A stretch of 64,000 nucleotides of DNA, from the IMG/VR virus record IMGVR_UViG_3300044633_003049, positions 147,785 through 211,784 of that record; one strand, 5' to 3'. The translations under genes and the position numbers were made by a program. A model generated the notes under the pieces. The model was not told the origin of the DNA. It saw nothing but the letters and a program-made list of their open reading frames with translations, and did not search any database. Numbering within the stretch: position 1 is the first letter of the stretch; the number at the start of each line of letters is the position of its first letter. Of this stretch, positions 4,267-60,807 are shown piece by piece.

Positions 4267-5071
4267 AAAACTTTATCGGGGTATTTGTTATTCCTGATTT
4301 TGTCCCTCTACTAATTCCGTTATATTTGTAAACTTGGTATGAATAATCTCTTTTATCAATATCAACTTGGTAGTACATATCATTTTGTTCAGTAATAGTG
4401 TGACTCGTACTATAACTATCATTTGTAAAATCTAAAATTGTACCTTCTTTTGCGTTATAAAACTTTGCTGTCATAAAAAAGGTGTTACTTGTCGTTGTAC
4501 CACTTAAATTTGTTTCAGTTAAAACACTCTCATCTTGGAACCAAAAGAAATACATATTTTCTTTGTTACTATAATTTGATCCTCTAAAAACAGGTAAATG
4601 TATATAACCATTAAGTGAATTATAAAACATTTTTTCACCTAACGGTAACGACAAATTTTTTGCAAATATTAATTTTCTATTTTGTCTTGTTGGTGGTTCA
4701 CATGTTAATACATTACCTGAGACGGTTCCTGGTGTTTTAAAAAATTCCAATCTAAAAAAACTTTCGGTGGCCTGTTTCAACATACTTTCATTTTCTTGTG
4801 AACTTATACCTTGTGGGGTATAATCTTGAGTATATGTTCCATCACTTAAAAAATAAAAATAAAACCAAATATCGGTTTGCGCTACACCATCAGATAAATA
4901 TGGTTTATGGATATATCTAACCGTTTCGTAATTCTCAATTGGATTAATAATATCACTTAACACTTCGGTTTCAAATTCTTTCAAATTTTCTTCCCAACCG
5001 AGATTTGTTTGAAAATCAGTTTCAGTATTTAATAATATATTTAAATCAGTATCTTTTCTTAATATTTTCAT
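4253..5071 (-). CDS. Hypothetical virion structural protein
   Basis: 272-aa ORF tightly packed in the baseplate operon. Confidence 0.65.
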   Translation of the reverse strand: MKILRKDTDLNILLNTETDFQTNLGWEENLKEFETEVLSDIINPIENYETVRYIHKPYLSDGVAQTDIWFYFYFLSDGTYTQDYTPQGISSQENESMLKQATESFFRLEFFKTPGTVSGNVLTCEPPTRQNRKLIFAKNLSLPLGEKMFYNSLNGYIHLPVFRGSNYSNKENMYFFWFQDESVLTETNLSGTTTSNTFFMTAKFYNAKEGTILDFTNDSYSTSHTITEQNDMYYQVDIDKRDYSYQVYKYNGISRGTKSGITNTPIKFYEKN

Positions 5072-5072
5072 G

Positions 5073-6863
5073 TTAACAATCTGAATTACTATTTTTATTA
5101 TTTATATCCATGAAACTCGTTATTCCATTTGATTTATTTTTATAATATCTTTCATTTCTTAAATAGAAATTAATGTTTGCTTTAACATAATGATTACCAT
5201 TCATAAAAGGAAAATCTGTTCCGAATCCATCGGAATCAACGTAACCGTGATCATATATATCTCTCCATCTCCAAACTTTATCATATGGGTCATACTTTGC
5301 ATTTTCAGGTAAATTGAAAATATCATTAGTATTTGCAGTTTCGGTATATGGTGATAATTCCCTTAATTTAATTCTATAATGTGGTTGATATATTAATCCT
5401 TCTAAATTTGTTGATGACGCATATGTTGAACCCGATGTTTGTCCGTGATTAAATATTGTTATTGGATTTGTGATTTTATGAAATGATTCACTTACAATTC
5501 TCTCAGTCATTTCTTTTGGGTTATATTCAACAAAGGCACCATTTAATATTGAACCTATTGGTAATGTTTGTCCACTTAAAAATGTAAATCCAGTGTATCC
5601 AGGTAAATTTGTGTTTCCAGTAAATGACGTACTCGTTAATCCAATTTCGTTTGATGTGGTTCCACTAAAATGTTCATCAATCCATGTATCGTGAAAATGA
5701 AATTTATATCCAACCTTTGGTGGATAATTAAAATATCCATTTCCATTTCTAAAAATTGCAGTAACAAAAACATTTGTTGGACTAAATCCTAAATTATTTG
5801 TTAATCCACTTAATTTTAATGGTTCCTTAAAATCATATAAAACAGATTCCATTCTATTTCTTTCAACTATAACATCATTTGTACCTACACTATTTTCAAA
5901 TAGTATTTTTTTCTCGTCTTCAAACACTGGACTTTCAAATCCAAGTGAATCCATTATATATCCACCTTCATTAGTTAATGTTTTATGTTTGTGAACATAA
6001 TATTTGGAAGTTGAAGCAACAATGTTATTAAAATCTTTACATCTTTTACCTAACATAATTGTACTGAATGTTGTTCCCGTTTTTATTTGTGACTTTATAA
6101 TATTAATGACATATTTTTTAGAATCAAACGTTTCATTACCAACTGAATTGATATAAAAGGTTCTACCTGTTAATGTTAATCCTGTTAATGTACTACCAGA
6201 TAGAACCACATGTTCACCTTCGCTCATTCCATGTTCAACTGGTGATGTTAATTCATAATATGTGGTATAATCCACGACTCTAAATGGAATACCATCTTTA
6301 GCGGTGAAACTAACTTTAGTTCCGCCTGTTAGCGTATAGTCCATTTTAAATTCACTATCACCACTATAAACATAACTTAAATATAAATTCCAGTTTTGGT
6401 ATGGTGCCGATATTGGTGTTACGGTTGTGTGTGCTGTTGATCCTGATTTTACTATGTTTGGTGTAAAGGTACCTAATGTATTTCCCGTTACCGGTAAATT
6501 AACTTCTCTATAAACGTCTCTTCTTAAAAATGCAAATTCGTCATATGGTAAATAACCATCAAAAACAGTACTATCTTGTATGTTACTACCGTCACCCGTT
6601 AAATATAATCTTTGTTTTAAATAAGAATAAGGTGTCGATCCAGAATATAAATTACGAAAAACCATTTTTAACTTTCCATATATCTTATAATTTATACTTT
6701 CATTACGTTCTTTATAATATTGTTCATCTATATCTAATATTATGTCCCTTTCACCTATTCGCATAAGTGTATCACTATTGTCAAGATTTAGTTTTAATTC
6801 TAATTCTTGGTCATCCGCCTTTGCGAATTTTTTACTTGGTAATATGATTTGTTTCTTTTCCAT
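5073..6863 (-). CDS. Hypothetical virion structural protein
   Basis: 596-aa ORF coupled to its neighbours; 14 (S/T)GxT motifs. Confidence 0.65.
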   Translation of the reverse strand: MEKKQIILPSKKFAKADDQELELKLNLDNSDTLMRIGERDIILDIDEQYYKERNESINYKIYGKLKMVFRNLYSGSTPYSYLKQRLYLTGDGSNIQDSTVFDGYLPYDEFAFLRRDVYREVNLPVTGNTLGTFTPNIVKSGSTAHTTVTPISAPYQNWNLYLSYVYSGDSEFKMDYTLTGGTKVSFTAKDGIPFRVVDYTTYYELTSPVEHGMSEGEHVVLSGSTLTGLTLTGRTFYINSVGNETFDSKKYVINIIKSQIKTGTTFSTIMLGKRCKDFNNIVASTSKYYVHKHKTLTNEGGYIMDSLGFESPVFEDEKKILFENSVGTNDVIVERNRMESVLYDFKEPLKLSGLTNNLGFSPTNVFVTAIFRNGNGYFNYPPKVGYKFHFHDTWIDEHFSGTTSNEIGLTSTSFTGNTNLPGYTGFTFLSGQTLPIGSILNGAFVEYNPKEMTERIVSESFHKITNPITIFNHGQTSGSTYASSTNLEGLIYQPHYRIKLRELSPYTETANTNDIFNLPENAKYDPYDKVWRWRDIYDHGYVDSDGFGTDFPFMNGNHYVKANINFYLRNERYYKNKSNGITSFMDINNKNSNSDC

Positions 6864-21194: not shown

Positions 21195-21198
21195 AGTA

Positions 21199-21402: not shown

Positions 21403-21450
21403 AATATTTCTTTTATTAATATAAATATCCTAAATATTGTTATTATTCAA

Positions 21451-32367: not shown

Positions 32368-32396
32368 TTTTTATTTTATTATAAATAGGTTTAATA

Positions 32397-34325: not shown

Positions 34326-34340
34326 ATACTAATAAATAGA

Positions 34341-35220: not shown

Positions 35221-35261
35221 AATATAAGTTTATACTATAACTATGATAAAGTAAAGTTTTT

Positions 35262-35300
35262 AAATAAAAAAACCGATACCCATTTCTGGTATATCGGTTT
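35262..35300 (-). terminator. Intrinsic terminator after the tail tube gene
   Basis: Minus strand aaaccgatataccagaaatgggtatcggtttttttat; GAAA loop. Confidence 0.8.
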
Positions 35301-35321
35301 CTCATATGAAAAATTATTATA

Positions 35322-36134: not shown

Positions 36135-38966
36135 TTAGATATTGTCAAATGAAGCTCCTGTTGGAGTGATTACAAATTCCAAATCAATGAATTCTAAAGA
36201 ACGAGTTGGTTTGATATAAATCTTACCTCTTAATGTGTTAGCATCGATGTCCTCTGGATCATTAGATACACTCACACGGAAGTCATACAAACCTCTTTCT
36301 TTCTTAATTGATTCCAAGATAGGATTTACTAATCTTAAGAACTCTTGTCTTACTTGGTCGTCATTTTGTTCAAACAATAACCTTACAGCTACCGCAGAAA
36401 TCAATTTTCTAGCTCTTAATAATAATCTTCTTACGTTGATTCTATCTAAAGCCGACTCTCTAACTTGTAACGTTTTATTACCCCATATAATGGTACCTGT
36501 ATCAGAGAATGTTGCAATTGGGTTGATTCTCGCCTTATATAACTCATCTCTTTCGTCAAGAGTAAGTTTCTTTTGTGCTTTGATTGCGTTTACCAAACCT
36601 CTACTGTAACCCGCAACTGCGAACCAAGGATAAGATACGTTGTCAGTTAAGGCGATGTTCTTAACAACCTCACCTGTTGGTGGAATATATAATTGAGTTG
36701 CATTATCCGTGTCTCTTACTTGAATCCAAGGCCAATATGTGGCTGAATAGTTTGAGTCAACTGCGATACCGTCTAAATCGTCAATAACGTTAGATGCAAT
36801 AGTTTCATTTGGTGCTCCAATTATATAAATTGAATCCGCTCTATCAGTTTCAATCATGTCAATTGCTTGAGTTGTTAATGAACTATGGTCGTAGAAGTTA
36901 ATACCTGGAGTTGCAAATACGTTAATATCTACGGCCTCAGGATTTGCATATGTTTGAATACCTTCTAAATAAGCATAATAATCAGAGTTTCCATTTGCAG
37001 TGTCAAACAATCCACCATTTGTTGTAAGACCTGAAATATATGTTAATTTTCCAAATATATAACCGTCACCATATGTTCTTACTTGTCTGTAAATGTCCCA
37101 ACCATCAAAACCACCACATACGGCAAATGTAAATTTACGGAAGTTAATACTATCTAATTTACCTTTATCGGTACCTTCTAAATCATAAGGTGTTGTTTGG
37201 TACATTAATCCTGAAACTGTATTTCCAGTTATTGTAGCTGCGTTTATAGATAAGTGAAATCCGTCTGTTGATCCTTTTTGAGTTGCTTCTGTTGAACATT
37301 TATATTTAAACAAATCGGAGTCAAAATTAAAATTACCATCAGAAGATAAACCTAAAGATGTTTTTCTAAATTTATCACCATTACTTGTTATGTCATCATA
37401 AATTGTTTCACCAGAATCAAAAAATTCAGTTTTATAAAGAACACTACCTAATGTTGTTGAACCTGATAAAGTTGCATTTGTAAAACCTTTAAATCCTGCA
37501 GGAAATGCATTTGATGGTGCGTTAGAGTCCATAAGTAACATAATGTATTTAGAATTCAAAGTATACTCACCAGTTGATGTACCTATTTTTCTAGCAACAT
37601 ATCCTGCAACGTCTGGATTCATTGAACATCTTGAGAATTTTTCCAAAACAACCATGTTTTCATCGGAATCATTAAAATCTCTAACTAATATATCAAATTC
37701 ACCTGTTTCAATATTAATATTTTGAATTGTGATTTTAATTTCCTGATTTGCGGCGTTTCCGTCAGAAATTGTAATAACATCAAATAAATCATCAACTTTA
37801 CCACCACGAACTTCAGAAACCACAGTAGGTGACTTTGGTGTGTCCCAAGTATTTGAGAAGTTGTCACCTTCCGCATTATATACTTCAGTTAGGCTTAAAC
37901 CTCTAATTAAACCTTGATTATATAAGTTTTTTGTTAAGTTCGGATAAACTTCGTGAACATATAATGGAACATCGTTACCATCTTTATCATATGGACTTGT
38001 TCCTAAAACTTTAGTTATGTATTTTGTTGACGTTGAATCTAAACTACACGTGAAAACCTTAGCACCTGTAGTTCCTGTAACATAAATATTAAATTCCGAT
38101 AATGGGTCACTTGTTAACGTTGCCCCACTAATAGTAAAAGATGTGTTTCCAGTAACTTGAAAATTTAAAGATTCTTGTGAATAATTTCCTCTTGATCTTA
38201 ATGCCGCCATAACAATTTCCTTATCATATACTGAAGTTGCGGTATATGTATATTTTGTTGTGGTAAAATTCATTGAACTAGCAGCATAAACAAATAAGTA
38301 ACTATACACTTCGGTACCGTTAGTATTGGTAAACACGTTATTCCAATTTTTTATAGTTGCGGTTCCAATAGGACTTGTTTTTTGATTTCCCGTTAAACCT
38401 GATGTTGCTGATGATGGAACATTTCCAATTGTAAACCAATCACCTGTAGATAAACCGCTACCGTAATTAGTGACTATATAATTTGTAACCGTTGTACCAG
38501 TTGAATTGGTTTTACCAGATAATGAACTATAAAAAGTACTATATGTTGGGTTTACAATGTCCTCAGCTGTTGGTGTTGTAATACCTGTAGTTGAACTTGG
38601 AGTTTGTGTTAAGTCAACAGATATACCACCTATTGTTTTAATGCCGAATGTTTTTCCTGCTTTGTAACCTGTCTTACCTAATACTCTTGTTACAAATAAT
38701 TGATTTGACTCTTGTAAATAAGATTTAGCGACATAACCTAATTCATATTTTGGATTGCCAGCACCATCTTTTTCAGGTGAGGTTGGTCCGAAGTATGTTT
38801 TAAATTCGTCAAAATTTGAAATTAATATTGGTTCAAAAGCGGGACCTTTTAAGGTTTCACCCACTAATCCCAATGTTGTAACACCTATACTTTGTGCTAC
38901 GAATGTTAGATCTTTCTCTGATGTATAAACACCAGGAGACACGAAAACTCTGTTATTACTTGCCAT
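36135..38966 (-). CDS. Tail sheath protein (gp18-like)
   Basis: FVSPGVYTSEKD, GETLKGPAFEP, SNYSATYWPW, PWFAVAG..RG, INPI, WGNKTL, RINVRRLL. Confidence 0.95.
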   Translation of the reverse strand: MASNNRVFVSPGVYTSEKDLTFVAQSIGVTTLGLVGETLKGPAFEPILISNFDEFKTYFGPTSPEKDGAGNPKYELGYVAKSYLQESNQLFVTRVLGKTGYKAGKTFGIKTIGGISVDLTQTPSSTTGITTPTAEDIVNPTYSTFYSSLSGKTNSTGTTVTNYIVTNYGSGLSTGDWFTIGNVPSSATSGLTGNQKTSPIGTATIKNWNNVFTNTNGTEVYSYLFVYAASSMNFTTTKYTYTATSVYDKEIVMAALRSRGNYSQESLNFQVTGNTSFTISGATLTSDPLSEFNIYVTGTTGAKVFTCSLDSTSTKYITKVLGTSPYDKDGNDVPLYVHEVYPNLTKNLYNQGLIRGLSLTEVYNAEGDNFSNTWDTPKSPTVVSEVRGGKVDDLFDVITISDGNAANQEIKITIQNINIETGEFDILVRDFNDSDENMVVLEKFSRCSMNPDVAGYVARKIGTSTGEYTLNSKYIMLLMDSNAPSNAFPAGFKGFTNATLSGSTTLGSVLYKTEFFDSGETIYDDITSNGDKFRKTSLGLSSDGNFNFDSDLFKYKCSTEATQKGSTDGFHLSINAATITGNTVSGLMYQTTPYDLEGTDKGKLDSINFRKFTFAVCGGFDGWDIYRQVRTYGDGYIFGKLTYISGLTTNGGLFDTANGNSDYYAYLEGIQTYANPEAVDINVFATPGINFYDHSSLTTQAIDMIETDRADSIYIIGAPNETIASNVIDDLDGIAVDSNYSATYWPWIQVRDTDNATQLYIPPTGEVVKNIALTDNVSYPWFAVAGYSRGLVNAIKAQKKLTLDERDELYKARINPIATFSDTGTIIWGNKTLQVRESALDRINVRRLLLRARKLISAVAVRLLFEQNDDQVRQEFLRLVNPILESIKKERGLYDFRVSVSNDPEDIDANTLRGKIYIKPTRSLEFIDLEFVITPTGASFDNI

Positions 38967-48867: not shown

Positions 48868-50988
48868 TTATAAACCGTATTTAGATTTGTCTGCGTTATA
48901 GTTATTCAAAACTTCAGTTGATGTTAATGCACTACTATATAAACGGGTTATACCAATCTTACCATCAAAGTATTGTGGGTATTCACCATTATTATATGAA
49001 CCAATGTATAAGTTTGTAGTAGTGTTTAATATACTTGCTAAACTGTGATTTACAGTACCGATACTAACACCATTAACAAATGTTTGAAATGTATTGGCCG
49101 CAACATTAGTAAATACATAAACTATTTGATACCATGTATTAAGTGTTGCGGTGTGGTTTGTACTATTAACAAATAGTGTTGATCCTGAACCCGCACCCGA
49201 ACCATATTGTCCATAAAATGTTGAAGCAGTTGTTCTAACACTATAACCCACACTTGTTGTTAACCCAGCTGCGTTAAATTTACCAAGTACTACATCATTA
49301 CCTGCTACTGATTGATTCACCCAAACTTCTACTGTCCAATCACCACTTCCCGGTTCTAATGCCGCATTATCTGCAACTGAAATTTGTGATGAAGAACCAT
49401 TGTATGTGAAGTATGGTGATGTATATGTTATATTACTCATTGTTCCATTCAAATCATTACCTGATAAATCATTAATTGTTGTTCCACTACCAGGATATGA
49501 AGAAAGGTTTGATGGGTCGTAATGTAATACTAAATTGCTTGTAGTTATCCCACTTGCGGCGACACTTGGTGTGGGTGTAACTGAATTGGTAGGTGTGACC
49601 GTATTAGTGGGGGTATTAGTGGGTGTATTCGTTGGAGTTTGCGTAGGTGTTTCAGTAACCGTAGGAGTTGGTGTGTTAGTTGGAGTAGGTGTTGGGGTTT
49701 CACTTCCTGTTGGTGTTGGTGTGTTAGTCGGTGTATTAGTCGGCGTTTGCGTTGGAGTAACGGTATTTGTTGGTGTCGAAGTAATTGTGTTAGTAGGAGT
49801 GTTTGTAGGTGTAATACTTGGTGTTGGTGTATTGGTTGATGTATTAGTTGGTGTAACAGTATTAGTAGGAGTAACAGTATTAGTAGGTGTTGGTGTGTTA
49901 GTTGGTGTTGGTGTTGGGCTTGGTAAAACATCTGAACAACCATATATTGAATAATTTGGTTTAATTGATGTTAAATAATGATGATTAACATGAACAAAAT
50001 CCAACGGTTCTTCAAAATACTTAACTTGTTTTAAAACACCATTAAGTGAATTATTACCAAAAATTTGTACGATTTCATTTTCAGAAGACCTTAATGATGG
50101 AATTATTTCCTCAAAGTTTTCTAATTTATATATTCTTTTACCGTTATGATAAATTTTAAGTGTTCCTAATCTTTTTTGTTTTTCTCCTGCCCATTTTTTA
50201 TTTAATTCTTCCACATAACTATATTCAGTATCCCCCGTAATCCAATTTAATGATCCGGTAACCATTGTATAACCTGTGGTGATTTGTGTTGAGTGACCTA
50301 TAAATGAACCCGAAAAGAAACTACCAGTATCACCAGTTGTCGGAGCCCATAATTCATCAGTATAACTAACTGCGTGTGGACCTAATATTAAATCATTAAA
50401 TCCCCCCTCATTCTCAATCTCACAACCATAAAGATATGTGTATCTATCAAATGTGATTGTAATATTAAAATCGTCATATATTCCATTTGCACATAATTCA
50501 GGAGTATTACCTGTTATTGTGTAATATGACTCCGTGTACCCACTATCTGGATTACATAATCCCGAATAATGAAATGACTCCCATTTTATCTTTTTATTAT
50601 TGGTAAATGAGAATGTTAAATTATTATCCGCGTAATTCCCATTAGCCAAATCATCTTTAATTCCTAAATAGTAAAATGTCGTTCCAGTTACTAATCTATC
50701 AAAAACCAAATCTAATGTCCAACCCTTCTCTGTTCTTCTACGAACAGTAAAATCACAGGTGTCTCCCGTATAACGAGTATTCACCGCAACTTCCCAAGGT
50801 GAAGTTAGTCCCGTTAAACAAGAAGAATCGATAGTTAGTCCTGTATATGTTATTTCCGTGTCGAAATCTAAGACCTCTTCATTATAATCCATTTGAACTT
50901 TTGATAGTTCATAGTCATATAATTCGGAATAATCTACCTTTAAATCGAGTTTGGAACCGTAAAATCTTAAAATATTCTGATTAGCCAT
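48868..50988 (-). CDS. Virion protein with Pro/Thr mucin-like linker and C-terminal LamG/concanavalin A-like domain
   Basis: LVLHYD...[50 protein letters not shown]; start MANQN at 50988 preferred. Confidence 0.8.
49545..49920. repeat. Low-complexity Pro-Thr repeat (TPTPTNTPT)
   Basis: Translation of the 48868 ORF. Confidence 0.9.
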
Positions 50989-50989
50989 G

Positions 50990-51030
50990 TTTATATAAAT
51001 ATCTTTCATAACATTTGATATTTATATAAA
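50990..51030. promoter_or_regulatory. Perfect 14-bp inverted repeat forming back-to-back putative late promoters
   Basis: tttatataaatatc 50990-51003 and gatatttatataaa 51017-51030, between divergent genes. Confidence 0.7.
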
Positions 51031-53529: not shown

Positions 53530-53562
53530 AAAATATTATATTAAAATAAAATATTTATTAGT

Positions 53563-54135
53563 ATGTCACAAGGAAAAGGAACAATATCATCTAACGATTT
53601 AATGCAAAAATTAGTTAATGCTAAAAAGGTTATGAATAAAGTAGACGGCGGAAACTACGAAAGAGGTCATGTAAATGAAGAAATGTTAAGGTCTAATCCA
53701 GAAGATTTAATGAATAGTCAAGATTTACCACAACAATCTTCTACAAAACAAATGGGTATGCCGTCTGTTGATAAAATACAAAATTCTAAATTACCTGACG
53801 CAATTAAAAAAGCAATGATTGAGAATCCAATTCAACAAATATCTTTAAATGATACACTTGATATGGATTTCTTAAAAGGTGCTAAAAGATTAATGGAACA
53901 AGAAGGTGTCGGTAAAAAACAACCACAACAAAAACAAGTAGTACAATATAATAGTAATATTGATATGGGGGCAATTGCCACACTTATTGAAAATACAGTT
54001 CGTAAAGTGATGGACGAAAAGTTAAATCAAATATTAACAGCATCAACCACAGCATCAATTAATGAAAATTTAGTATTAAAGGTAGGTGATTCAATATTCA
54101 AAGGTAAAATCACTGGTGTAAATAAAGCAAAGTAA
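53563..54135 (+). CDS. Hypothetical protein
   Basis: 190-aa ORF with TATTTAT upstream. Confidence 0.7.
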   Translation: MSQGKGTISSNDLMQKLVNAKKVMNKVDGGNYERGHVNEEMLRSNPEDLMNSQDLPQQSSTKQMGMPSVDKIQNSKLPDAIKKAMIENPIQQISLNDTLDMDFLKGAKRLMEQEGVGKKQPQQKQVVQYNSNIDMGAIATLIENTVRKVMDEKLNQILTASTTASINENLVLKVGDSIFKGKITGVNKAK

Positions 54136-54186
54136 TTTTGTTTTCTCATTTTTATTTCTTATATTATAGACATATAATAGTAATTA

Positions 54187-55407
54187 ATGTCAAAAATTAG
54201 AATTTTAGCGATTCCCTCGGATAAACACGGAGTAGGTAAGTTTAGGATGATGGACCCTTACCAATTTATTGGTGATAATCATTCGGATGATATCCATGTT
54301 GATATCTCATATAATGCAGATAACAATGATGAATATTTTTTAAATTACGATATCGTCGTATTTCATACGTTCATACATCAAACAAATCACGAACAAAACA
54401 TTGGAAGAATAAAATGGTTGCAATCCAAGGGTATTAAAGTTATTATGGATATTGATGATTTGTGGTTTGTCGATCAAAGACACCCAATGTATCATCACGT
54501 TAAAGCGTCTAAGATAGGTGAGATGAAAATCGACATGTTAAAAGCAGTTGATTACGTTACAACGACGACACCAATTTTTGCTAAAACAATTAAAGATAAA
54601 TTACATATAAAAAATATTGAGATTTTTCCAAATGCAGTTAATGAAGATGAACCTCAGTTTAAGAGAGAACCAATTAAGTCAGATAAAATTAGATTTGGTT
54701 GGTTAGGTGGTTCATCACACTTACACGATATTGAATTAATGTCAAATGGTATTTCTTCAACGCACAACAGTTTCAAAGATAAAGTACAATTTGTGTTATG
54801 TGGATTTGACTTAAGAGGAAGTGTCACTGAAATTAACCAAGAAGGAAAACAAAGACAACGTCCAATTCAACCAACAGAAACTGTTTGGTATAAGTATGAA
54901 AAATTCTTTACTGAAGATTATAAAGTATTAAGTCCTCAATATAAAAGTTTTTTAAATACATTTGTTGATACACCATATGATGATGAAAATGAATCATATA
55001 GAAGAAGGTGGACAAAGGACATTAAAACATACGCATCAAATTATAATACATTTGACGTGTCTTTGGCTCCGTTAGTTGAATCTCAATTTAACGCTAACAA
55101 ATCACAATTAAAAGTTATTGAAGCTGGGTTTCATAAGAAAGCAATTATTGCAAGTGAAACTGACCCATATACATTAGATTTAATTTCAGCAATTAACGAC
55201 GGTAAGTTTAATGATAATGGTAATGCATTATTAGTTAACCCAAGAAGAAATCATAAGGATTGGGCAAAACATATGAAACGTTTAGTTGAGAATCCAAATA
55301 TGATTGAAGATTTAGGTAATCGTTTATATGAAACAGTAAAAGACAAATACTCATTAAAAAAAGTTTGTCAAGATAGAGTAGAATTTTTTAAATCAATAAT
55401 AAAATAA
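54187..55407 (+). CDS. Glycosyltransferase, GT-B fold (family 4-like)
   Basis: VIMDIDDLW, RFGWLGGSSHLHD, FDVSLAPL...FN..KSQLKVIEAG...IIAS. Confidence 0.8.
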   Translation: MSKIRILAIPSDKHGVGKFRMMDPYQFIGDNHSDDIHVDISYNADNNDEYFLNYDIVVFHTFIHQTNHEQNIGRIKWLQSKGIKVIMDIDDLWFVDQRHPMYHHVKASKIGEMKIDMLKAVDYVTTTTPIFAKTIKDKLHIKNIEIFPNAVNEDEPQFKREPIKSDKIRFGWLGGSSHLHDIELMSNGISSTHNSFKDKVQFVLCGFDLRGSVTEINQEGKQRQRPIQPTETVWYKYEKFFTEDYKVLSPQYKSFLNTFVDTPYDDENESYRRRWTKDIKTYASNYNTFDVSLAPLVESQFNANKSQLKVIEAGFHKKAIIASETDPYTLDLISAINDGKFNDNGNALLVNPRRNHKDWAKHMKRLVENPNMIEDLGNRLYETVKDKYSLKKVCQDRVEFFKSIIK

Positions 55408-55413
55408 AACAAC

Positions 55414-55650
55414 ATGCATTATTTAGTTACAATCGGTTATGAAACCGAACAAATGGACAGAGAAGGAAACCCTCGTGTTAAAAAGTACAAGTACATTATC
55501 GAAGCGGAATCGGTAGAAGAAGCAACAATTGTCGCATCAAAGTACAGAGCAGGTGACACACGTTCAAGTGAAAGCATTTCAGTTGCTAAAATGGCAATTG
55601 AATGTATCATTGATAGTAAGAACACACCTGAGTATTACAAAAGTAAATAA
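55414..55650 (+). CDS. DUF4494-like small protein
   Basis: Y.VTIGYE......GNPRVKKYKYIIEAESVEEA pattern resembles Bacteroidota DUF4494. Confidence 0.5.
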   Translation: MHYLVTIGYETEQMDREGNPRVKKYKYIIEAESVEEATIVASKYRAGDTRSSESISVAKMAIECIIDSKNTPEYYKSK

Positions 55651-55669
55651 CAATTAAACACCAACTGAT

Positions 55670-55882
55670 ATGGAGTTCTATAGTCGTGAAATACAAATTA
55701 TGCGTCAATCGCAAAGTAAAATGGCTTTAGAGTATGTCACAACAGTTGGTGTTTCTGTTACTTTAGAAGAGTTAATACGAATAACTGATTTATTCGTAGA
55801 AATATGTTTAAGACCCCAAGATGATGACCTTAAAAGAAGAATAAAGGCGTTAGATAAATGGTTGGAAGAAAAGAAAAAATAA
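55670..55882 (+). CDS. Hypothetical protein
   Basis: 70-aa ORF in the operon. Confidence 0.6.
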   Translation: MEFYSREIQIMRQSQSKMALEYVTTVGVSVTLEELIRITDLFVEICLRPQDDDLKRRIKALDKWLEEKKK

Positions 55883-55883
55883 A

Positions 55884-56537
55884 ATGGAAAAAGAAGAAAT
55901 AGAACAGTACCTAAAAAAATTAGAAGAGATTGAAAAAACACTTAATGACGATACTGATGAAAGTCAGGATATGAGTTATTTAAGTGAGTTAGAAGATGTT
56001 TTAAATAAATTATCTGGAGAAATTATTAATGATGACGCACCAAAAAATGTTAATACTCCTGTTGCCGGACGAAACATAATTAACACTCAACCAACAATGA
56101 CGGGAGGTGGTACTTTAGTTAAAGTTAAAAAATTAGTTCCTGAAGCTGTAATCCCATCATATTCAAAAGTTGGGGATGCTGGTATGGATTTAACAATCAC
56201 AAAAGAAATAGAAAATACATCATTTAGTGTTTCTTATGGATTTGGTATTGCAATTGAAATTCCACAAGGTTATGTCGGTTTAGTATTCCCACGTTCATCT
56301 GTACGTAACCAAGATTTAATATTATCAAATTGTGTGGGTGTTATTGATAGTGGATATAGAGGAGAATTACAAGCCACCTTTAAGAAAACAAATGGTTTGG
56401 ACTCAATTAAATACAAAGTTGGAGATAGAGGAGCTCAAATCATCATATTACCTTATCCTACCATATATATGACGGAGGTTCTTGAATTATCTAATACAGA
56501 AAGAGGTGAGGGAGGATTTGGATCTACTGGTGTTTGA
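55884..56537 (+). CDS. dut: Trimeric dUTPase with acidic N-terminal extension
   Basis: Motifs AGMDL, PRSS, GVIDSGYRGE, RGAQII, RGEGGFGSTG. Confidence 0.95.
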   Translation: MEKEEIEQYLKKLEEIEKTLNDDTDESQDMSYLSELEDVLNKLSGEIINDDAPKNVNTPVAGRNIINTQPTMTGGGTLVKVKKLVPEAVIPSYSKVGDAGMDLTITKEIENTSFSVSYGFGIAIEIPQGYVGLVFPRSSVRNQDLILSNCVGVIDSGYRGELQATFKKTNGLDSIKYKVGDRGAQIIILPYPTIYMTEVLELSNTERGEGGFGSTGV

Positions 56538-56580
56538 TGATATTTATAAACAATAAACAGAACTTTTAAAACTATCAATT

Positions 56581-57312
56581 TTGGCATATAAAACTAGAAC
56601 CAAAACAACCAACCACCCACCCGTATTAGTAGAAGAGAAGAAGATATCACATAAGGATAGGATTAGACAAATCATCAAACGTCCTAAAGAAAAGTTCCTA
56701 ACGAAAAACCAAGAAATTTATTGGAACATTCTTGGAGAAAATCAAATAACATTATGTTTCGGTCCCGCAGGTGTAGGTAAGTCCTACATAGCAATGAAAC
56801 GTGCTGTGGACCTATTATACGACGATTCTAACAAGTATGAGAAGATTATCATAGTTAGGCCCGCAGTTGAAGCTGAAGAGAAATTAGGGTCACTTCCAGG
56901 GGGTTTAGAAGAGAAATTAGACCCATACATTTATCCGTCATATTATCTATTAAACAAAATTATTGGTAAGGAATCAAGAGAAGAACTAAAAGACCAAGGT
57001 TATATTGAGGTTGCTGCTCTCGCTTACATGAGAGGTTGGAACGTAGATAATACTATTCTTGTTTTTGAGGAAGCACAAAATGCTACCCCATCACAAATTA
57101 AGTTATTATTAACTCGTATTGGATTTAATTCCAAATTTTTCTTATCAGGAGACCTTGAACAATCAGATAAATTTAGAGATAAAACTAAATCTGGTTTATT
57201 TGATGCCAAAATGAGATTACAAGATGTTAAGGGAATTGGTATTTTTGAATTTGGAATGCAAGACATTGTACGAAACCCAATCATTGGTGAAATATTGAAT
57301 AGGTACGATTAA
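56581..57312 (+). CDS. phoH: PhoH-family ATPase
   Basis: GPAGVGKSY, RPAVE, GSLPG, YMRGWN, EEAQN, GDLEQSD, DIVRNP; TTG start. Confidence 0.92.
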   Translation: MAYKTRTKTTNHPPVLVEEKKISHKDRIRQIIKRPKEKFLTKNQEIYWNILGENQITLCFGPAGVGKSYIAMKRAVDLLYDDSNKYEKIIIVRPAVEAEEKLGSLPGGLEEKLDPYIYPSYYLLNKIIGKESREELKDQGYIEVAALAYMRGWNVDNTILVFEEAQNATPSQIKLLLTRIGFNSKFFLSGDLEQSDKFRDKTKSGLFDAKMRLQDVKGIGIFEFGMQDIVRNPIIGEILNRYD

Positions 57313-57337
57313 AATAATTATTAAATTACATATTTTG

Positions 57338-57372
57338 ACCCACATCGTTTACTATAATGGTGTGGGTTTATT
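57338..57372 (+). terminator. Putative terminator after phoH
   Basis: acccacatcgtt...aatggtgtgggt hairpin followed by a T-rich stretch. Confidence 0.55.
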
Positions 57373-57408
57373 ATTTACTTATGGTTATGAATATGTTATA
57401 TTTTTATT

Positions 57409-58053
57409 ATGGAAATTTTTATTAGTATAGATGGTGTTATAAGAAACACAATTCAAAAATTTGACTTTCATTATAAGGATTCTTATTTGGATAGTGAAAG
57501 TGAAGATGTCTTTGAATACGACATAACGGAACCAATTCAAAACGACAATTTATTAAATTCTTATAAATTTCAATCACAAGAAGAATTTGAATATTTTTTA
57601 TTTGTTGAATACCCAATTGAAATATTTGGTCACGCTGGTTTGAGTTACTCCACCACATTTACGGATTTACATAAAATGATTTTTGATAATCCTGAACACA
57701 ATTTTACATTAGTTGGTTTAGATGAATTAGGTAAAGCAAAACCTGCAACACTTTTCTTCTTATCAAAAAATGGATTCATGGGTAATAATATTAAATCTAT
57801 TAAAACTGAAAACTTAAATGAGAATTGGAATAAGTGTGATGTTTGGATTACTGATTGTAAAAAAATTGTTGACTCGTGTCCAAGTGATAAAGTTGTAATT
57901 AAATTTAATACGACTTATAATCAATACTTTACAAATAAAAAAGAAATAACTAAATTAACAGAAATACAAGAACCATGGTTGAAATCTTTGGAAAAATCTA
58001 CTACATTGACCTTGACGGAGTCACAGACAAATGTAGAACAGGAAAAAATATAA
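57409..58053 (+). CDS. HAD-like 5'(3')-deoxyribonucleotidase (NT5C-like) with degenerate catalytic motifs
   Basis: ISIDGVIRN motif I, CDVWITD motif IV, FNTTYN. Confidence 0.55.
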   Translation: MEIFISIDGVIRNTIQKFDFHYKDSYLDSESEDVFEYDITEPIQNDNLLNSYKFQSQEEFEYFLFVEYPIEIFGHAGLSYSTTFTDLHKMIFDNPEHNFTLVGLDELGKAKPATLFFLSKNGFMGNNIKSIKTENLNENWNKCDVWITDCKKIVDSCPSDKVVIKFNTTYNQYFTNKKEITKLTEIQEPWLKSLEKSTTLTLTESQTNVEQEKI

Positions 58054-58256
58054 AAGACGAGGATGGAGAAGATGTTACCGAGGTAAACATTTTCAAATAT
58101 GAAATTATAAAAATGTGTTTAGATAGAGTGTTGGCCGAGTTTGAACAAGTAGATGAAGAACTTGGTGAATTCGCACAAAACAATACAACCACATCATTTA
58201 AAATTGCATTTAACACACTAATAAAAAATCAAATATTAATAGAAGACGATGAGTAA
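57975..58256 (+). CDS. Hypothetical protein
   Basis: 93-aa ORF overlapping the upstream gene by 79 nt and coupled to the next gene. Confidence 0.6.
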   Translation: MVEIFGKIYYIDLDGVTDKCRTGKNIKDEDGEDVTEVNIFKYEIIKMCLDRVLAEFEQVDEELGEFAQNNTTTSFKIAFNTLIKNQILIEDDE

Positions 58257-59313
58257 TAACGAAAACATAGAAAAATTAGAATCTGCTTTAGGTAGATTAA
58301 ATAACAATGAAAGTGTTGTTTATTTTTTAACATACGACACTAAAACAAATGCAAGAGCATCAGTAAAATACATTTACGATTTAGCATTAACACTTAATAG
58401 AAATGGTAGAAAATCCAAAATTTTAGTTGAAGATAAAAACTATGTTGGGGTTAGTTCTTGGTTAAGTGAAGAATATAGTGAATTAGAGATTGTATCTATC
58501 AAAGAAGATAAAGTTGAAATTAAAATTGAAGATGTCTTAGTTGTTCCCGAGTATTACGGAAACACATTACAACAATTATCAAACATTAGATGTATTAAAG
58601 TTTTATTGATACAACAAAAAGAATATATGTTTGAGACATTACCAATTGGTAGTAGGTATAGTGAATATGGATTTGATAAAGTTATTACCACAACTGAAAG
58701 TGCAAAAAAATACATTTTAGATTACTTCCCTGAAAGTTTAGTGTATATTATTCCGCCAATTATTGGAGATAATTTTAAACCAATTAATTTACCATTAAAA
58801 CCTTATGTGGCAATCAGTTGTAGAGATAGAGCGGTACATAGAAAATTAATTTCTGAATTTTATTTGAAGTTCCCACAATTGCGTTGGATTACTTTTAGAG
58901 ATATGGTTCAGATGTCTTATGATGAGTTTTCGTCAAACTTAAAGGAATGTATGGTATCGGTATGGGTTGATGATGAAAGTACGTTTGGTACATTCCCATT
59001 AGAATCTATGAAATGTGGGGTTCCTGTAGTCGGTAAAATTCCTGACACTGAACCAGATTGGTTAAGTGAAAATGGTATGTGGACATACGATGGTAATAAG
59101 TTAGTTGAATTATTAGGTACCTATATTTTAGCGTGGATTGAGGGTATTGAATTAACTGACGAAGTTAAAGATAAAATGAAAGAAACGTTATTACCTTATG
59201 ACACCGAAATTACAAAAAATAATATTTTATCAATATTTGGTTCATTAATAAATAAAAGAGTTGATTCTATTCAATCGGCATTAGACAAATTAAAACAAGA
59301 AGAAACAGTATAA
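58249..59313 (+). CDS. Glycosyltransferase-like protein, GT-B fold
   Basis: DVLVVPE, DDESTFGTFPLESMKCGVPVVG (GT4-type acidic-x7-E signature). Confidence 0.7.
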   Translation: MSNNENIEKLESALGRLNNNESVVYFLTYDTKTNARASVKYIYDLALTLNRNGRKSKILVEDKNYVGVSSWLSEEYSELEIVSIKEDKVEIKIEDVLVVPEYYGNTLQQLSNIRCIKVLLIQQKEYMFETLPIGSRYSEYGFDKVITTTESAKKYILDYFPESLVYIIPPIIGDNFKPINLPLKPYVAISCRDRAVHRKLISEFYLKFPQLRWITFRDMVQMSYDEFSSNLKECMVSVWVDDESTFGTFPLESMKCGVPVVGKIPDTEPDWLSENGMWTYDGNKLVELLGTYILAWIEGIELTDEVKDKMKETLLPYDTEITKNNILSIFGSLINKRVDSIQSALDKLKQEETV

Positions 59314-59314
59314 T

Positions 59315-60094
59315 ATGAAAAATATAACAGTAATTTTACCTTTACATAAATTAGATGATGATTATAAAGTTATGTTAAATAACGCGTTATCGTCTATCGA
59401 GGATTTCCACAATGATGTTAAAGTGTCAATTGTTTGTCCAAGTAAATTAAAAAAAGATTTAGAGAATCTTTCTGAAAAATTAGAAATTGAAATTGTGGTT
59501 AATAAAGGTGAAACAGATTTTTGTTCACAAGTTAATTTAGGTATTGAGAAATGTGATACTGAATGGTTTACTATTTTAGAGGTTGATGATGAATTTAGAC
59601 CTATTTGGTTAAAATCAATCAACGATTATATGAAAATTTATAAAGATGTTGATGTATTTTTACCTATTGTAAGAGACATTAATACTGATGGTAAATTTGT
59701 AAGTTTTACAAATGAATCAGCTTGGGCATATGGTTTTACTGAAATGCAAGGATTCATTGACAATGAAGTATTATTAGATTTCCAAAATTATCAAATAAGT
59801 GGTGGTTTATATAGAACCCAAGTTATTAAGGATAACGGTAGTTTAAAAGAAAATATCAAATTAACATTCGCATACGAATTCTTTTTAAGATTAACACACA
59901 ATGGTATTAGGGTCATGACAGTTCCTAAAATCGGTTATCAACATGTAAACTTAAGAGAAGACTCATTATTTTGGGATTACAAGAATAATGAAAAACAAAA
60001 ACTGTCAGAAAATGAGGTTAAATTTTGGTTGGAAACTGCCAAAAAAGAATTCTTTTTTAAGAATAAACGAGATGTAAATTATGAAACAGTTTAA
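59315..60094 (+). CDS. Glycosyltransferase family 2 (GT-A fold)
   Basis: ITVILP, NLGIEKCDTEWFTILEVDD, YEFFLRL....IRV..VPKIGYQH. Confidence 0.85.
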   Translation: MKNITVILPLHKLDDDYKVMLNNALSSIEDFHNDVKVSIVCPSKLKKDLENLSEKLEIEIVVNKGETDFCSQVNLGIEKCDTEWFTILEVDDEFRPIWLKSINDYMKIYKDVDVFLPIVRDINTDGKFVSFTNESAWAYGFTEMQGFIDNEVLLDFQNYQISGGLYRTQVIKDNGSLKENIKLTFAYEFFLRLTHNGIRVMTVPKIGYQHVNLREDSLFWDYKNNEKQKLSENEVKFWLETAKKEFFFKNKRDVNYETV

Positions 60095-60793
60095 ATGCCG
60101 AGACCACGAACCCAAAAAATATACTTTGGTGAGGATCAAGAAAAAGCCGTCGTTAATTACCTAGAGAGTACTGACGAAGACGAAAGAAACAAAATATTCA
60201 ATGAGTTTTTAAGAGAACCATTAGTTATTATGGTTGAAAGTATTATTAGAAGATATAAATTATATAGGAAGGATATGGAATTTGAAGAAATTCACACCGA
60301 CACTATGTCTTTTTTAATCACCAAAATTAATAAATTTGACCACACAAAGAACACTAAAGCGTATTCATACTTTGGAACTATCTGTAAAAACTACCTTATG
60401 GGAGCAATACAGAAAGACACTAAAGAACAGAATAGACAAGTATCTTATGATGACATATCATCTGACATTGAAGATAGAAAAGATTTGTCTTATGTTATTG
60501 ATGAACATATTATTGATTATCAAAGTGTTATAATTAAATTAACCATTTCTTTAGAAAACTTTATTGAGAAGGAAAACCTAACGGAAAACGAACAAAAATT
60601 GGGATATGCCTTGTTAGAGATTTTTAGCAATTTTGATAAAATATTCCAAGTTGGGGATGGTAATAAATTCAATAAGAACCTTATCTTACTCTCATTACGA
60701 GAAATGACCTCATTATCCACAAAAGAGATTAGAGTATCCCTAAAACGTTTTAAAAAGATGTATGACGGTATTTTGGTTGGATTTTTAGAATAA
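60095..60793 (+). CDS. Sigma-70-like factor, T4 gp55-like late sigma candidate
   Basis: Region-2-like KINKFDHTKNTKAYSYFGTICKNY; N-terminal KIYF. Confidence 0.7.
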   Translation: MPRPRTQKIYFGEDQEKAVVNYLESTDEDERNKIFNEFLREPLVIMVESIIRRYKLYRKDMEFEEIHTDTMSFLITKINKFDHTKNTKAYSYFGTICKNYLMGAIQKDTKEQNRQVSYDDISSDIEDRKDLSYVIDEHIIDYQSVIIKLTISLENFIEKENLTENEQKLGYALLEIFSNFDKIFQVGDGNKFNKNLILLSLREMTSLSTKEIRVSLKRFKKMYDGILVGFLE

Positions 60794-60807
60794 ATCTATT
60801 TATTGAT

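What the first reader, a model, noticed from the sequence alone, without database searches (positions are those of the whole stretch)
54187..60094. Three-glycosyltransferase cassette without visible sugar-synthesis or base-hydroxymethylase genes
Seen: GT-B, GT-B-like and GT2 genes interleaved with dUTPase, PhoH and a HAD-like gene, directly upstream of the sigma factor. Two established precedents exist: DNA glucosylation (T4 alpha/beta-gt, which needs hmC) and virion protein glycosylation. Inference: three different GTs suggest an oligosaccharide chain, and with the (S/T)GxT bias this favours virion glycosylation. The nucleotide-metabolism neighbours keep DNA modification possible.
Basis: partly seen in the sequence, partly recalled or inferred. 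Interest (0 to 1): 0.7.

Follow-up and report, generated by a model that had tools for sequence, protein, structure and literature searches.

The report
Jumbo lake phage glycosyltransferase trio
Three real sugar-transferring enzymes form an ancient, conserved gene module in a widespread but uncultured family of giant lake-water phages; the phage lacks what it would need to put sugars on its DNA, so the enzymes most likely sugar-coat phage proteins, which is unproven.

Summary
The three genes are real. GT406 (54187-55407) and GT354 (58249-59313) are GT4-like GT-B enzymes. GT2 (59315-60094) is a GT-A enzyme with an invariant DxD motif. dUTPase, PhoH and a probable sigma factor are confirmed; the 'HAD-like' gene is not. 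The module is conserved in 73-81 of 81 related contigs. It persists at 33-42% identity in distant relatives.

'No sugar-synthesis genes' holds only for the window. The same 212-kb record carries two large sugar-biosynthesis islands.

'No base hydroxymethylase' holds. A complete 335-kb relative with the cassette has no thymidylate-synthase homologue, ThyX, TET/JBP or C5-methylase, so DNA glycosylation is unlikely.

GT354's closest characterised relatives are the Actinobacillus alpha-1,6-glucosyltransferases Agt and AmGGT, which extend protein-linked or free glucosides. T4 DNA glucosyltransferases are not among the best fold matches.

No polytopic membrane protein (Wzx/Wzy/WecA type) is encoded.

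The (S/T)GxT bias is real, sharply specific and confined to about ten virion-type proteins.

Best reading, at 0.45: an early-expressed cytoplasmic protein-glycosylation core. Rivals are host envelope glycan remodelling, a small-molecule or other acceptor, and DNA.

The parts
54134..54186 (+). Conserved sigma-70-like promoter upstream of GT406 (TTGTTT, 16 nt spacer, TATATT)
   Evidence: The same -35/-10 arrangement is kept in most of about 40 distinct upstream sequences from related loci. Only 7 gene-proximal sites of this class occur in the 212-kb record. That this marks early expression is an inference.
54187..55407 (+). GT406: soluble GT4-like GT-B glycosyltransferase with a conserved basic insertion at about residues 205-276
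   Evidence: PHROG 7162 E 8.6e-42. AF2 pLDDT 86. Foldseek matches PglA, MshA, BshA, SPS and ALG2 at TM about 0.6-0.65. More than 8000 homologues were found. A 42% identical orthologue sits in the distant locus L129. No TM segment.
55414..55882 (+). Two small conserved ORFs (78 aa and 70 aa) of unknown function
   Evidence: Present in 75 and 62 of 81 loci at 83% and 77% median identity. No family hits.
55884..56537 (+). Trimeric-type dUTPase with a roughly 75-aa N-terminal extension
   Evidence: PF00692 E 6e-22. TIGR00576 scores 103 bits.
56581..57312 (+). PhoH-like ATPase (TTG start)
   Evidence: PF02562 E 9e-62. Median identity across loci is 90%.
57337..57368 (+). 13-bp-stem hairpin, terminator-like, separating two transcription units
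   Evidence: Found. Present in some relatives and absent in others. A hairpin-less variant appears in a metatranscriptome contig (joint 57311-57402).
57374..57408 (+). Conserved sigma-70-like promoter (TTTACT, 17 nt spacer, TATATT) ending 6 nt before the ATG of the next gene
   Evidence: Conserved in about 30 distinct upstream sequences. Also found in G001.
57409..58053 (+). o214: conserved protein of unknown function.
   Evidence: No hits. S-I-D-G-V is invariant in the 22-sequence alignment. Conserved next to GT354 in distant relatives.
57975..58256 (+). o93: small conserved ORF overlapping the end of o214
   Evidence: Present in 81 of 81 loci at 71% identity. 34% identity in L121.
58249..59313 (+). 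GT354: GT4-type GT-B glycosyltransferase of the Agt/AmGGT (alpha-1,6-glucosyltransferase) kind
   Evidence: A profile of the family against PDB hits 8xsg at E 2e-25. AF2 pLDDT 95.5. Foldseek gives 8xsg at TM 0.76/0.78. In Swiss-Prot the top hit is B3H2N1 (Agt) at TM 0.78/0.83 and E 1.4e-15; the next hit has E 4e-10.
59315..60094 (+). GT2-family GT-A glycosyltransferase, soluble
   Evidence: PF00535 scores 28.1 against a cut-off of 23.3. Invariant residues are P9, H11, Q72, N74, G76, E89, D91 and D92. No TM segment.
60095..60793 (+). Probable phage sigma factor, co-transcribed with GT354 and GT2
   Evidence: Weak hits to Sigma70_r2, PHROG 234 (late sigma) and SigK. Median identity 89%. Always directly downstream of GT2.
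36135..38966 (-). Tail sheath (943 aa, with large insertions) carrying 11 (S/T)GxT sites, all upstream of the conserved C-terminal core
   Evidence: PHROG 23 E 6e-65. Sites lie at residues 127-645. 11 sites against 1.8 expected.
48868..51009 (-). Virion protein with a LamG/ConA-like domain and 12 (S/T)GxT sites
   Evidence: PF13385 E 5e-16. PHROG 8510. 12 sites against 2.4 expected.
3394..6863 (-). Three adjacent genes of unknown function (290, 272 and 596 aa). The 596-aa and 290-aa products have the strongest (S/T)GxT enrichment.
   Evidence: 14 sites against 0.7 expected (z 15) and 7 against 0.6 (z 8.5). 10 of 14 sites are conserved in the G001 orthologue.

Best explanation
The cassette is the conserved core of a phage-encoded cytoplasmic glycosylation system in an uncultured clade of lake-water jumbo phages of about 335-350 kb.

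Shown:
- All three proteins are soluble, catalytically plausible glycosyltransferases.
- They form an ancient syntenic block, GT406-PhoH-o214-o93-GT354-GT2-sigma.
- The genome also carries large, mosaic nucleotide-sugar islands.
- It encodes no membrane export machinery and no pathway that would put a hydroxyl group on a DNA base.

Inferred:
- The two operons are read early, from host-type sigma-70 promoters.
- The enzymes use host UDP-sugars to build the conserved inner part of a glycan directly on phage proteins in the cytoplasm.
- GT354 acts as an Agt-like retaining alpha-glucosyl-extending enzyme. Which enzyme starts the chain, GT406 or GT2, is not resolved.
- The variable islands add strain-specific outer sugars.
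- The most likely acceptors are the roughly ten virion-surface proteins (sheath insertions, fibre-like proteins, LamG protein) that are 6-fold enriched in the motif (S/T)-G-x-T.
For: GT identity and fold.

GT354 and Agt/AmGGT:
- Profile E 2e-25; TM 0.76-0.83, far ahead of other GT4 enzymes.
- These enzymes extend glucose on glycoproteins or oligosaccharides (PMC12159676).

Conservation:
- The cassette is present in 73-81 of 81 loci at about 73-75% identity.
- The block is kept at 33-42% identity in L121, L122, L128 and L129.

No route to a modified base:
- PF00303, ThyX, Tet_JBP and C5-methylase are all absent from complete G001.
- The thymidylate-synthase homologue in G002 is an ordinary ThyA.
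- G000 has a C5 methylase, which implies ordinary cytosine.

Sugar islands. They are mosaic between G000 and G001.

No protein with 6 or more TM segments occurs in G000 or G001.

Motif:
- TG.T 70 against 12.3 expected (z 16); SG.T 44 against 7.5 (z 15).
- AG.T, NG.T, [ST]G.S and [ST]A.T are at expectation.
- The bias is confined to virion-type proteins and is conserved in G001.
- It is absent from Phapecoctavirus structural proteins, used as a control.

The promoter class is shared with sugar island B.

RNA-library contigs lie on all cassette genes.
Against: - No result links any of the three enzymes to the (S/T)GxT motif.
- GT406's nearest structural neighbours (PglA, ALG2, MshA, BshA, SPS) act on lipid-linked sugars or small molecules, not proteins.
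- No initiating protein GT of a known kind was found; GT41/NGT is absent.
- The operons look early, as do T4's DNA glucosyltransferases.
- Phapecoctavirus has GT406 homologues but no motif bias.
- The motif could be a structural feature of a fibre or decoration fold. In two proteins the sites are strongly conserved in position.
- The GT406-substrate complex prediction gave no answer.
- The acceptor of a GT4 or GT2 enzyme cannot be read from its fold.
Confidence: 0.45

Rival explanations
1. Host envelope glycan remodelling. The soluble GT4 and GT2 enzymes work at the inner face of the membrane on the host's own undecaprenyl-phosphate-linked LPS, capsule or EPS intermediates. They use the phage's nucleotide sugars and change the cell surface during infection, for superinfection exclusion or to protect progeny from adsorbing to debris.
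For: - GT406's best fold matches include PglA and ALG2, which act on lipid-linked acceptors.
- The sugar islands look like O-antigen or capsule loci and are mosaic between genomes.
- JGI labels the proteins 'glycosyltransferase involved in cell wall biosynthesis'.
- Early-type promoters fit host takeover.
Against: - No initiating polyprenyl-phosphate transferase, flippase, polymerase or ligase candidate exists: no protein has 6 or more TM segments in G000 or complete G001.
- The three GTs are core genes conserved like replication genes, not variable morons.
- GT354's specific relatives act on glycoproteins or free glucosides.
- This reading does not explain the virion-restricted motif.
Confidence: 0.25
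2. DNA base glycosylation of the T4 or RB69 kind. The GTs transfer sugars to a hydroxylated pyrimidine in phage DNA to block restriction.
For: - Early-type promoters and dUTPase/PhoH neighbours.
- GT406 has a conserved basic insertion, including an R-R-R-W stretch.
- From memory and not tested here: in T4 the alpha-gt gene lies next to gene 55, the late sigma factor.
Against: - Every known glycosylated base starts from hmC, hmU or 5hoC made by a thymidylate-synthase homologue, or from TET/JBP oxidation (PMC13326640). None of these genes is present in complete G001, which has the cassette. G001 also has no C5 methylase.
- G002's thymidylate-synthase homologue is an ordinary ThyA.
- G000 encodes a C5 cytosine methylase, which needs ordinary cytosine in DNA.
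- T4 AGT and BGT are not among the top 50 PDB or top 30 Swiss-Prot fold matches of either GT-B model.
Confidence: 0.07
3. Another soluble acceptor. The GTs make or modify a small molecule or polymer in the infected cell, for example a glucoside or compatible solute, a thiol-type cofactor as MshA/BshA do, a storage glucan, or RNA.
For: - GT406 and GT354 resemble MshA, BshA, sucrose-phosphate synthase, GlgM and tetrahydrobiopterin glucosyltransferase at TM 0.5-0.65.
- AmGGT itself prefers free oligosaccharides.
Against: - Three different GTs plus large islands for exotic sugars are an unusual investment for a small metabolite.
- No partner biosynthetic genes sit in the conserved block.
- This reading does not explain the motif bias.
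Confidence: 0.13

Closest known systems
Actinobacillus pleuropneumoniae NGT/Agt cytoplasmic N-glycosylation system, and A. minor AmGGT (PDB 8XSG/8XSH)
   Same: - GT354 is a sequence-profile relative (E 2e-25) and structural relative (TM 0.76-0.83) of Agt/AmGGT.
- These are soluble, metal-independent, retaining GT4 enzymes that add alpha-1,6-glucose to a sugar already on a protein or oligosaccharide.
- The second Glu of the E-x7-E region is kept (E252).
   Different: - Identity is only about 15%.
- The uracil-contacting Arg203 and the acceptor-defining residue pairs are not kept.
- No HMW1C-like GT41 initiating enzyme is present.
- N-x-S/T is depleted, not enriched, in the candidate acceptor proteins.
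Mycobacteriophage virion glycosylation (Freeman et al. 2023, cited in PMC12619734)
   Same: Phage-encoded GTs are proposed to decorate virion proteins with glycans made in the cytoplasm.
   Different: - From memory: in those phages the GT genes sit in the late structural operon and the glycans are on C-terminal extensions of capsid and tail-tube subunits.
- Here the GTs are in early-type operons next to PhoH and the sigma factor.
- Here the candidate sites are a dispersed four-residue motif in the sheath and fibre-like proteins.
- No sequence relationship was tested.
Virus-encoded glycosylation machinery of chloroviruses and mimiviruses
   Same: A large virus carries its own nucleotide-sugar pathways plus many soluble GTs and no ER- or membrane-type export system. 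(From memory: in those viruses the glycans end up on capsid or fibril proteins at non-canonical sites.)
   Different: Those are eukaryotic viruses, the protein families are unrelated, and nothing here has been shown experimentally.
T4 alpha- and beta-glucosyltransferases; RB69/DLP3 arabinosyl-5hoC system
   Same: They are GT-B enzymes and, from memory, early phage genes. Also from memory, a GT lies next to the late sigma gene in T4.
   Different: - The required base hydroxylase or hydroxymethylase (a thymidylate-synthase homologue) is absent from a complete relative.
- AGT and BGT are not among the best fold matches.
Phapecoctavirus four-GT cassette (e.g. NC_052662 gp102-gp105), uncharacterised
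   Same: It contains two GT406 homologues at about 26% identity, in a run of four GT genes in a large myovirus.
   Different: - It has no GT354 homologue. GT354 has no match in any of 50,697 phage records.
- Its structural proteins show no (S/T)GxT bias.
- Its neighbours are different genes.

Membership tests
T4-type DNA glucosylation system | Pre-replicative synthesis of a hydroxylated pyrimidine by a thymidylate-synthase homologue (gp42-like) | tested here: not met
   PF00303 is absent from G000 and from complete G001. The only clade hit, in G002, is an ordinary ThyA (TIGR03284, 288 bits).
T4-type DNA glucosylation system | GT structurally of the AGT (GT72) or BGT (GT63) kind | tested here: not met
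   Neither appears in the top 50 PDB or top 30 Swiss-Prot Foldseek matches of GT406 or GT354.
TET/5mYOX-dependent DNA hypermodification (methylase + TET + GT) | A TET/JBP dioxygenase together with a C5 cytosine methylase | tested here: not met
   PF12851 is absent from G000, G001 and G002. A C5 methylase is present in G000 and G002 but absent from complete G001.
NGT/Agt cytoplasmic N-glycosylation system | Agt-type GT4 alpha-1,6-glucosyltransferase | tested here: met
   GT354 family profile against 8xsg gives E 2e-25. TM is 0.76-0.83, the best hit by five orders of magnitude in E-value.
NGT/Agt cytoplasmic N-glycosylation system | HMW1C-like GT41 N-glycosyltransferase | tested here: not met
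   PF13844 is absent from G000, G001 and G002.
NGT/Agt cytoplasmic N-glycosylation system | N-x-S/T sequons in the acceptor proteins | tested here: not met
   N.[ST] is depleted in the ten motif-rich proteins: 136 against 167.6 expected, z -2.8.
CAZy GT4-like GT-B glycosyltransferases (GT406, GT354) | Two-Rossmann GT-B fold with the conserved C-terminal Glu of the E-x7-E region | tested here: met
   The AF2 models match GT4 structures. E252 is nearly invariant in GT354. 28 of 66 family members hit Glycos_transf_1. The retaining mechanism itself cannot be tested here.
GT2 family (GT-A) | Pfam GT2 domain above its cut-off, and a DxD motif | tested here: met
   PF00535 scores 28.1 against a cut-off of 23.3. 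E89-x-D91-D92 is invariant in 23 sequences.
Wzx/Wzy- or GtrABC-type envelope glycan pathways | Polytopic membrane components (flippase, polymerase, ligase, polyprenyl-P transferase, GtrA/GtrC) | tested here: not met
   A hydropathy scan finds no protein with 6 or more TM segments in G000 or complete G001. None of the cassette proteins has any TM segment. Use of the host's own components cannot be excluded.
HAD superfamily (o214) | Motif I D-x-D with a nucleophilic Asp | tested here: not met
   The position reads S-I-D-G-V, invariant in 22 aligned homologues. No Pfam, NCBIfam or PDB-profile hit.
Mycobacteriophage-type virion glycosylation | Glycans demonstrated on virion proteins | not testable with these tools
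   There is no isolate and no proteomic data. Only the motif statistics bear on this.

The most novel reading that the evidence does not exclude
A widespread, uncultured clade of lake jumbo phages runs its own sequon-directed cytoplasmic O-glycosylation system. (S/T)-G-x-T would be the acceptor motif on the tail sheath, fibre-like proteins and other exposed virion proteins. The conserved GT406/GT354/GT2 trio would build the inner glycan. Hypervariable sugar islands, with nonulosonic-acid pathways and sialyltransferase-like genes in some relatives, would supply strain-specific outer sugars. This would be a bacterial-virus counterpart of giant-virus glycosylation and the first defined phage glycosylation sequon.
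Probability: 0.3. Interest if true: 0.8.

Novelty: new variant of a known kind. Interest (0 to 1): 0.6.

Why it matters
Phage-encoded glycosyltransferases are usually assigned by default to DNA modification or to serotype conversion. Here a core, ancient three-GT module sits in very abundant lake phages, with thousands of near-identical homologues in metagenomes. Those phages demonstrably lack the known chemistry for DNA glycosylation and lack any export machinery. They do carry tens of kilobases of exotic sugar pathways and a sharply defined motif on their exposed virion proteins.

If the proteins are glycosylated, virion glycosylation would extend from mycobacteriophages to environmental jumbo phages. 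It would also give a testable sequon and suggest a glycan-based layer of phage-host or phage-grazer interaction in freshwater. The GT354 family would add a large viral branch to the little-studied Agt/AmGGT enzymes.

Tried and rejected
1. Single-sequence searches of GT406 and GT2 against PDB sequences found nothing. The shallow GT406 profile also found nothing.
2. The PDB profile search for o214 found nothing, so the HAD call was dropped.
3. DNA (megablast) search of the cassette and protein (tblastn) search of GT354 against 50,697 phage records gave no match. There is no cultured relative. PolB is only 23-27% identical to Salinibacter and Nostoc phage polymerases.
4. The T4 late-promoter consensus TATAAATA is not enriched in the window: 16 against 16.8 expected. 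It was replaced by an empirically found motif, TATTTAT.
5. The generic promoter/terminator scan was uninformative apart from the hairpin.
6. The GT406 plus 187-aa TGxT-rich protein complex prediction gave 'no answer' and is not used as evidence.
7. 'Moraphages' (PMC12619734) were considered as the clade's identity. That paper was searched only for a few terms and no membership test was run. From the abstract alone (genomes up to 307 kb, Bacteroidota hosts) nothing ties it to this 335-351-kb clade, so the question is left open.
8. The Bacteroidota O-glycosylation motif D(S/T)(A/I/L/V/M/T) and N-x-S/T were tested as alternative sequons. Neither is enriched.
9. The Phapecoctavirus comparison was meant to link the GT406 family to the motif. 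It was negative and now serves only as a control.
10. The metatranscriptome contigs show presence in RNA libraries but cannot give strand, transcript ends or expression rank.

Full report
WHAT THE WINDOW IS

The window is the last 64 kb of a 211,784-bp IMG/VR virus record (G000). Its GC content is about 31%, and CheckV estimates it as 63% complete.

It is collinear with a complete 335,630-bp relative, G001; 174 of 219 ORFs have a match there. A 351-kb ENA contig with a Gp23-type capsid gene near the cassette is also related.

The sheath and baseplate-wedge genes are myovirus-like. The family-B DNA polymerase is only 23-27% identical to any cultured phage's, and the cassette has no match in 50,697 GenBank phage records. 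The runs that hold this DNA are lake-water and freshwater metagenomes. This is therefore an uncultured, deep-branching clade of freshwater jumbo phages.

THE OBSERVATION

The + strand block 54187-60793 contains, in order:
- GT406
- two small ORFs of 78 and 70 aa
- a dUTPase
- PhoH
- a strong hairpin
- o214
- o93
- GT354
- a GT2 enzyme
- a probable sigma factor

GT406 matches a phage glycosyltransferase PHROG at E 8.6e-42. Its model (pLDDT 86) is a GT-B fold resembling PglA, MshA, BshA, sucrose-phosphate synthase and ALG2 at TM about 0.6-0.65.

GT354 has no family hit of its own. An exhaustive search found 464 cluster representatives. A 66-sequence alignment gave a model with pLDDT 95.5, and 28 of the 66 members hit Glycos_transf_1.

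GT2 passes the Pfam cut-off and keeps an invariant E-x-D-D motif together with the N-terminal P/H and Q-x-N-x-G signatures.

None of the cassette proteins has a hydrophobic segment.

The 'HAD-like' gene is not confirmed. It has no hit in any library, and the would-be motif I reads S-I-D-G-V in all 22 aligned homologues.

CONSERVATION

All cassette genes are present in 62-81 of 81 related IMG/VR loci. The GTs are at 73-75% median identity, PhoH at 90% and sigma at 89%. Neighbouring fibre-like genes are at 40-50%. GT406 alone has more than 8000 homologues in the protein collection.

In distant relatives at 33-42% identity the block persists:
- PhoH - o214-like - small ORF - GT354 - GT2 - sigma is kept.
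- In L129 a 42%-identical GT406 orthologue sits directly before PhoH.

The dUTPase is not part of the conserved linkage. The trio is therefore an ancient core module, not a moron.

SUGAR SYNTHESIS

G000 has six NAD-dependent epimerase/dehydratase genes outside it, and G001 has five to six.

Scanning 50 ORFs of two regions (G000 21013-35463 and 50629-79613) found the following:
- gmd- and fcl-like enzymes
- LegB/PseB-like dehydratases
- three DegT/PseC-like aminotransferases
- a UDP-Glc/GDP-Man dehydrogenase
- a sugar C-methyltransferase
- a NodU-like carbamoyltransferase
- a cytidylyltransferase
- two twitch radical-SAM proteins
- several methyltransferases
- a P4H-like 2OG oxygenase
- about eight further GT-like genes (GT2 x3, GT7-like x2, GT1, TOD1/MUCI70, DUF5672)

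Between G000 and G001 these islands are mosaic. Conserved anchors (92-95% identity) flank genes that are replaced or absent.

In a distant relative (L128), a NeuB / CMP-sugar synthetase / GT29-like sialyltransferase cluster lies directly upstream of GT354-GT2-sigma.

DNA AS TARGET

Known glycosylated bases start from hmC, hmU or 5hoC made by thymidylate-synthase homologues, or from TET/JBP oxidation (PMC13326640; PMC12619734 reference list).
- G000 has neither.
- G001 is complete and carries the cassette. It has no PF00303, ThyX, Tet_JBP or C5 methylase.
- The one thymidylate-synthase homologue in the clade (G002) is an ordinary ThyA.
- G000 encodes a C5 cytosine methylase, which implies ordinary cytosine in its DNA.
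- T4 AGT and BGT are absent from the best fold matches of both GT-B models.

I rate DNA glycosylation at about 0.07.

WHAT GT354 RESEMBLES

The family profile hits one solved structure far above all others: 8XSG/8XSH, A. minor AmGGT, at E 2e-25.

Foldseek agrees, with TM 0.76-0.78. In Swiss-Prot the top hit is the A. pleuropneumoniae alpha-1,6-glucosyltransferase Agt, with TM 0.78/0.83 and E 1.4e-15; the next hit has E 4e-10.

According to PMC12159676 these are soluble, metal-independent, retaining GT4 enzymes using UDP-Glc. Agt extends the N-linked glucose placed on adhesins by NGT, while AmGGT extends free glucosides.

GT354 keeps the key Glu (E252). It does not keep the uracil-binding Arg203 or the acceptor-defining residue pairs, so neither donor nor acceptor can be transferred by homology. 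No GT41/NGT is encoded.

ENVELOPE AS TARGET

A hydropathy scan of all ORFs found no protein with 6 or more TM segments in G000 or G001. The phage therefore encodes no Wzx, Wzy, WaaL, WecA/WbaP or Gtr-type component. Soluble GT4 and GT2 enzymes could still act on host lipid-linked intermediates, so this rival stays at about 0.25.

THE MOTIF

(S/T)GxT is strongly over-represented in about ten large proteins of G000. For example, the 596-aa protein has 14 sites against 0.7 expected (z 15).

The specificity is sharp:
- TG.T: 70 against 12.3 expected. SG.T: 44 against 7.5 expected.
- AG.T, NG.T, DG.T, GG.T, [ST]G.S, [ST]G.N, [ST]A.T and [ST]S.T are all at expectation.
- N-x-S/T is depleted, and the Bacteroidota O-glycosylation motif is at expectation.

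The sites are not tandem repeats.

The proteins that could be identified are a tail sheath whose 11 sites all lie upstream of the conserved C-terminal core and a LamG-domain virion protein; the other motif-rich proteins gave no family hit and are taken as fibre-like from their size and position.

The bias recurs in the G001 orthologues. Positional conservation is mixed: 32 of 81 sites against 20 expected overall, with 10 of 14 in one protein and 1 of 11 in the sheath. Phapecoctavirus structural proteins show no bias, 15 against 12.6, so this is not a generic property of myovirus tails.

The pattern looks like a sequon but could be a structural motif. Nothing ties it to a particular enzyme, and the one complex prediction gave no answer.

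EXPRESSION

TATTTAT(A/T) lies within 100 nt upstream of about 45 genes, in most within 7-50 nt, most of them large genes in the structural-gene regions. It is 17-fold enriched in upstream gaps, and I take it as the late-promoter-like element.

GT406 and o214 are instead preceded by conserved sigma-70-like promoters, TTGTTT-16-TATATT and TTTACT-17-TATATT. This class has only seven gene-proximal sites in G000. One of them sits before the first gene of sugar island B. In G001 it also precedes small early-looking ORFs.

GT354 and GT2 share an operon with the sigma factor. I infer early or middle expression. That fits either enzyme production ahead of virion assembly or host takeover, so it does not discriminate.

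Short contigs from four lake metatranscriptomes lie on every cassette gene at 95-100% identity, though DNA carry-over cannot be excluded.

VERDICT

The absence of sugar genes is an artefact of the window. DNA modification is unlikely. Protein glycosylation, probably of virion proteins, is the best-supported but unproven reading (0.45). It would be a new variant of known virus-encoded glycosylation.

Noticed in passing
G000 21013-35463 and 50629-79613 (outside the window; loci L092-L094): Two large nucleotide-sugar and glycan-biosynthesis islands with about 40 genes. They are mosaic between G000 and the complete relative G001, with conserved anchors at 92-95% identity flanking replaced or missing genes. 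This is the pattern of O-antigen-like diversifying loci.
   Followed up: partly
whole G000 record, e.g. window 51019-51025, 53552-53558, 60797-60803: TATTTAT(A/T) lies within 100 nt upstream of about 45 genes (mostly 7-50 nt), most of them large genes in the structural-gene regions. It is 17-fold enriched. It is the reverse complement of the T4 late-promoter core TATAAATA. It is often so close to the ATG (11-14 nt) that transcripts would be leaderless or nearly so. The sigma-70-like promoter of o214 also ends 6 nt before the ATG.
   Followed up: partly
window 36135-38966 (-): The tail sheath is 943 aa, about twice the length of the PHROG sheath profile. The large insertions carry all of its (S/T)GxT sites, and the sites turn over between G000 and G001 (1 of 11 conserved) while their density is kept.
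   Followed up: partly
window 12779-15040 (-): A 753-aa ribonucleotide reductase gene (PHROG 367, E 2e-80) has no homologue in the complete relative G001.
   Followed up: no
G000 14275-15249 (L099) and 10703-11317 (L103): A C5 cytosine DNA methylase, and possibly a second partial one, are present in G000 and G002 but absent from complete G001.
   Followed up: no
L082 1495-2652 (G002): The only thymidylate synthase in the clade is 385 aa and matches ThyA models in three separate stretches. This suggests an insertion within the gene.
   Followed up: no
window 57337-57368: The hairpin between PhoH and o214 is an indel within the clade: present in some relatives and cleanly absent in others. A metatranscriptome contig shows the hairpin-less form (joint 57311-57402).
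   Followed up: partly
L128 1092-9655: In a distant relative the GT354-GT2-sigma block is directly preceded by several glycan genes: NeuB, a CMP-sugar-synthetase-like gene, a GT29 sialyltransferase-like gene, a faint Maf/MptE-like hit and several methyltransferases. Together these look like a nonulosonic-acid pathway.
   Followed up: no
ESM Atlas neighbours of GT406: One viral cluster of GT406-like proteins is 787 aa long and carries a LAGLIDADG homing-endonuclease domain. Such insertions are typical of highly conserved, essential phage genes.
   Followed up: no
G000 as a whole: IMG/VR labels the record 'provirus', but it is collinear end to end with part of a complete linear 335-kb phage genome. 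The label may come from the host-like sugar islands. No integrase search was done.
   Followed up: no
G000 141278-148843 (partly window 1-1059): Very large (S/T)GxT-bearing proteins of 1989 and 431 aa have no counterpart in G001. The fibre-like gene set is highly variable within the clade.
   Followed up: no
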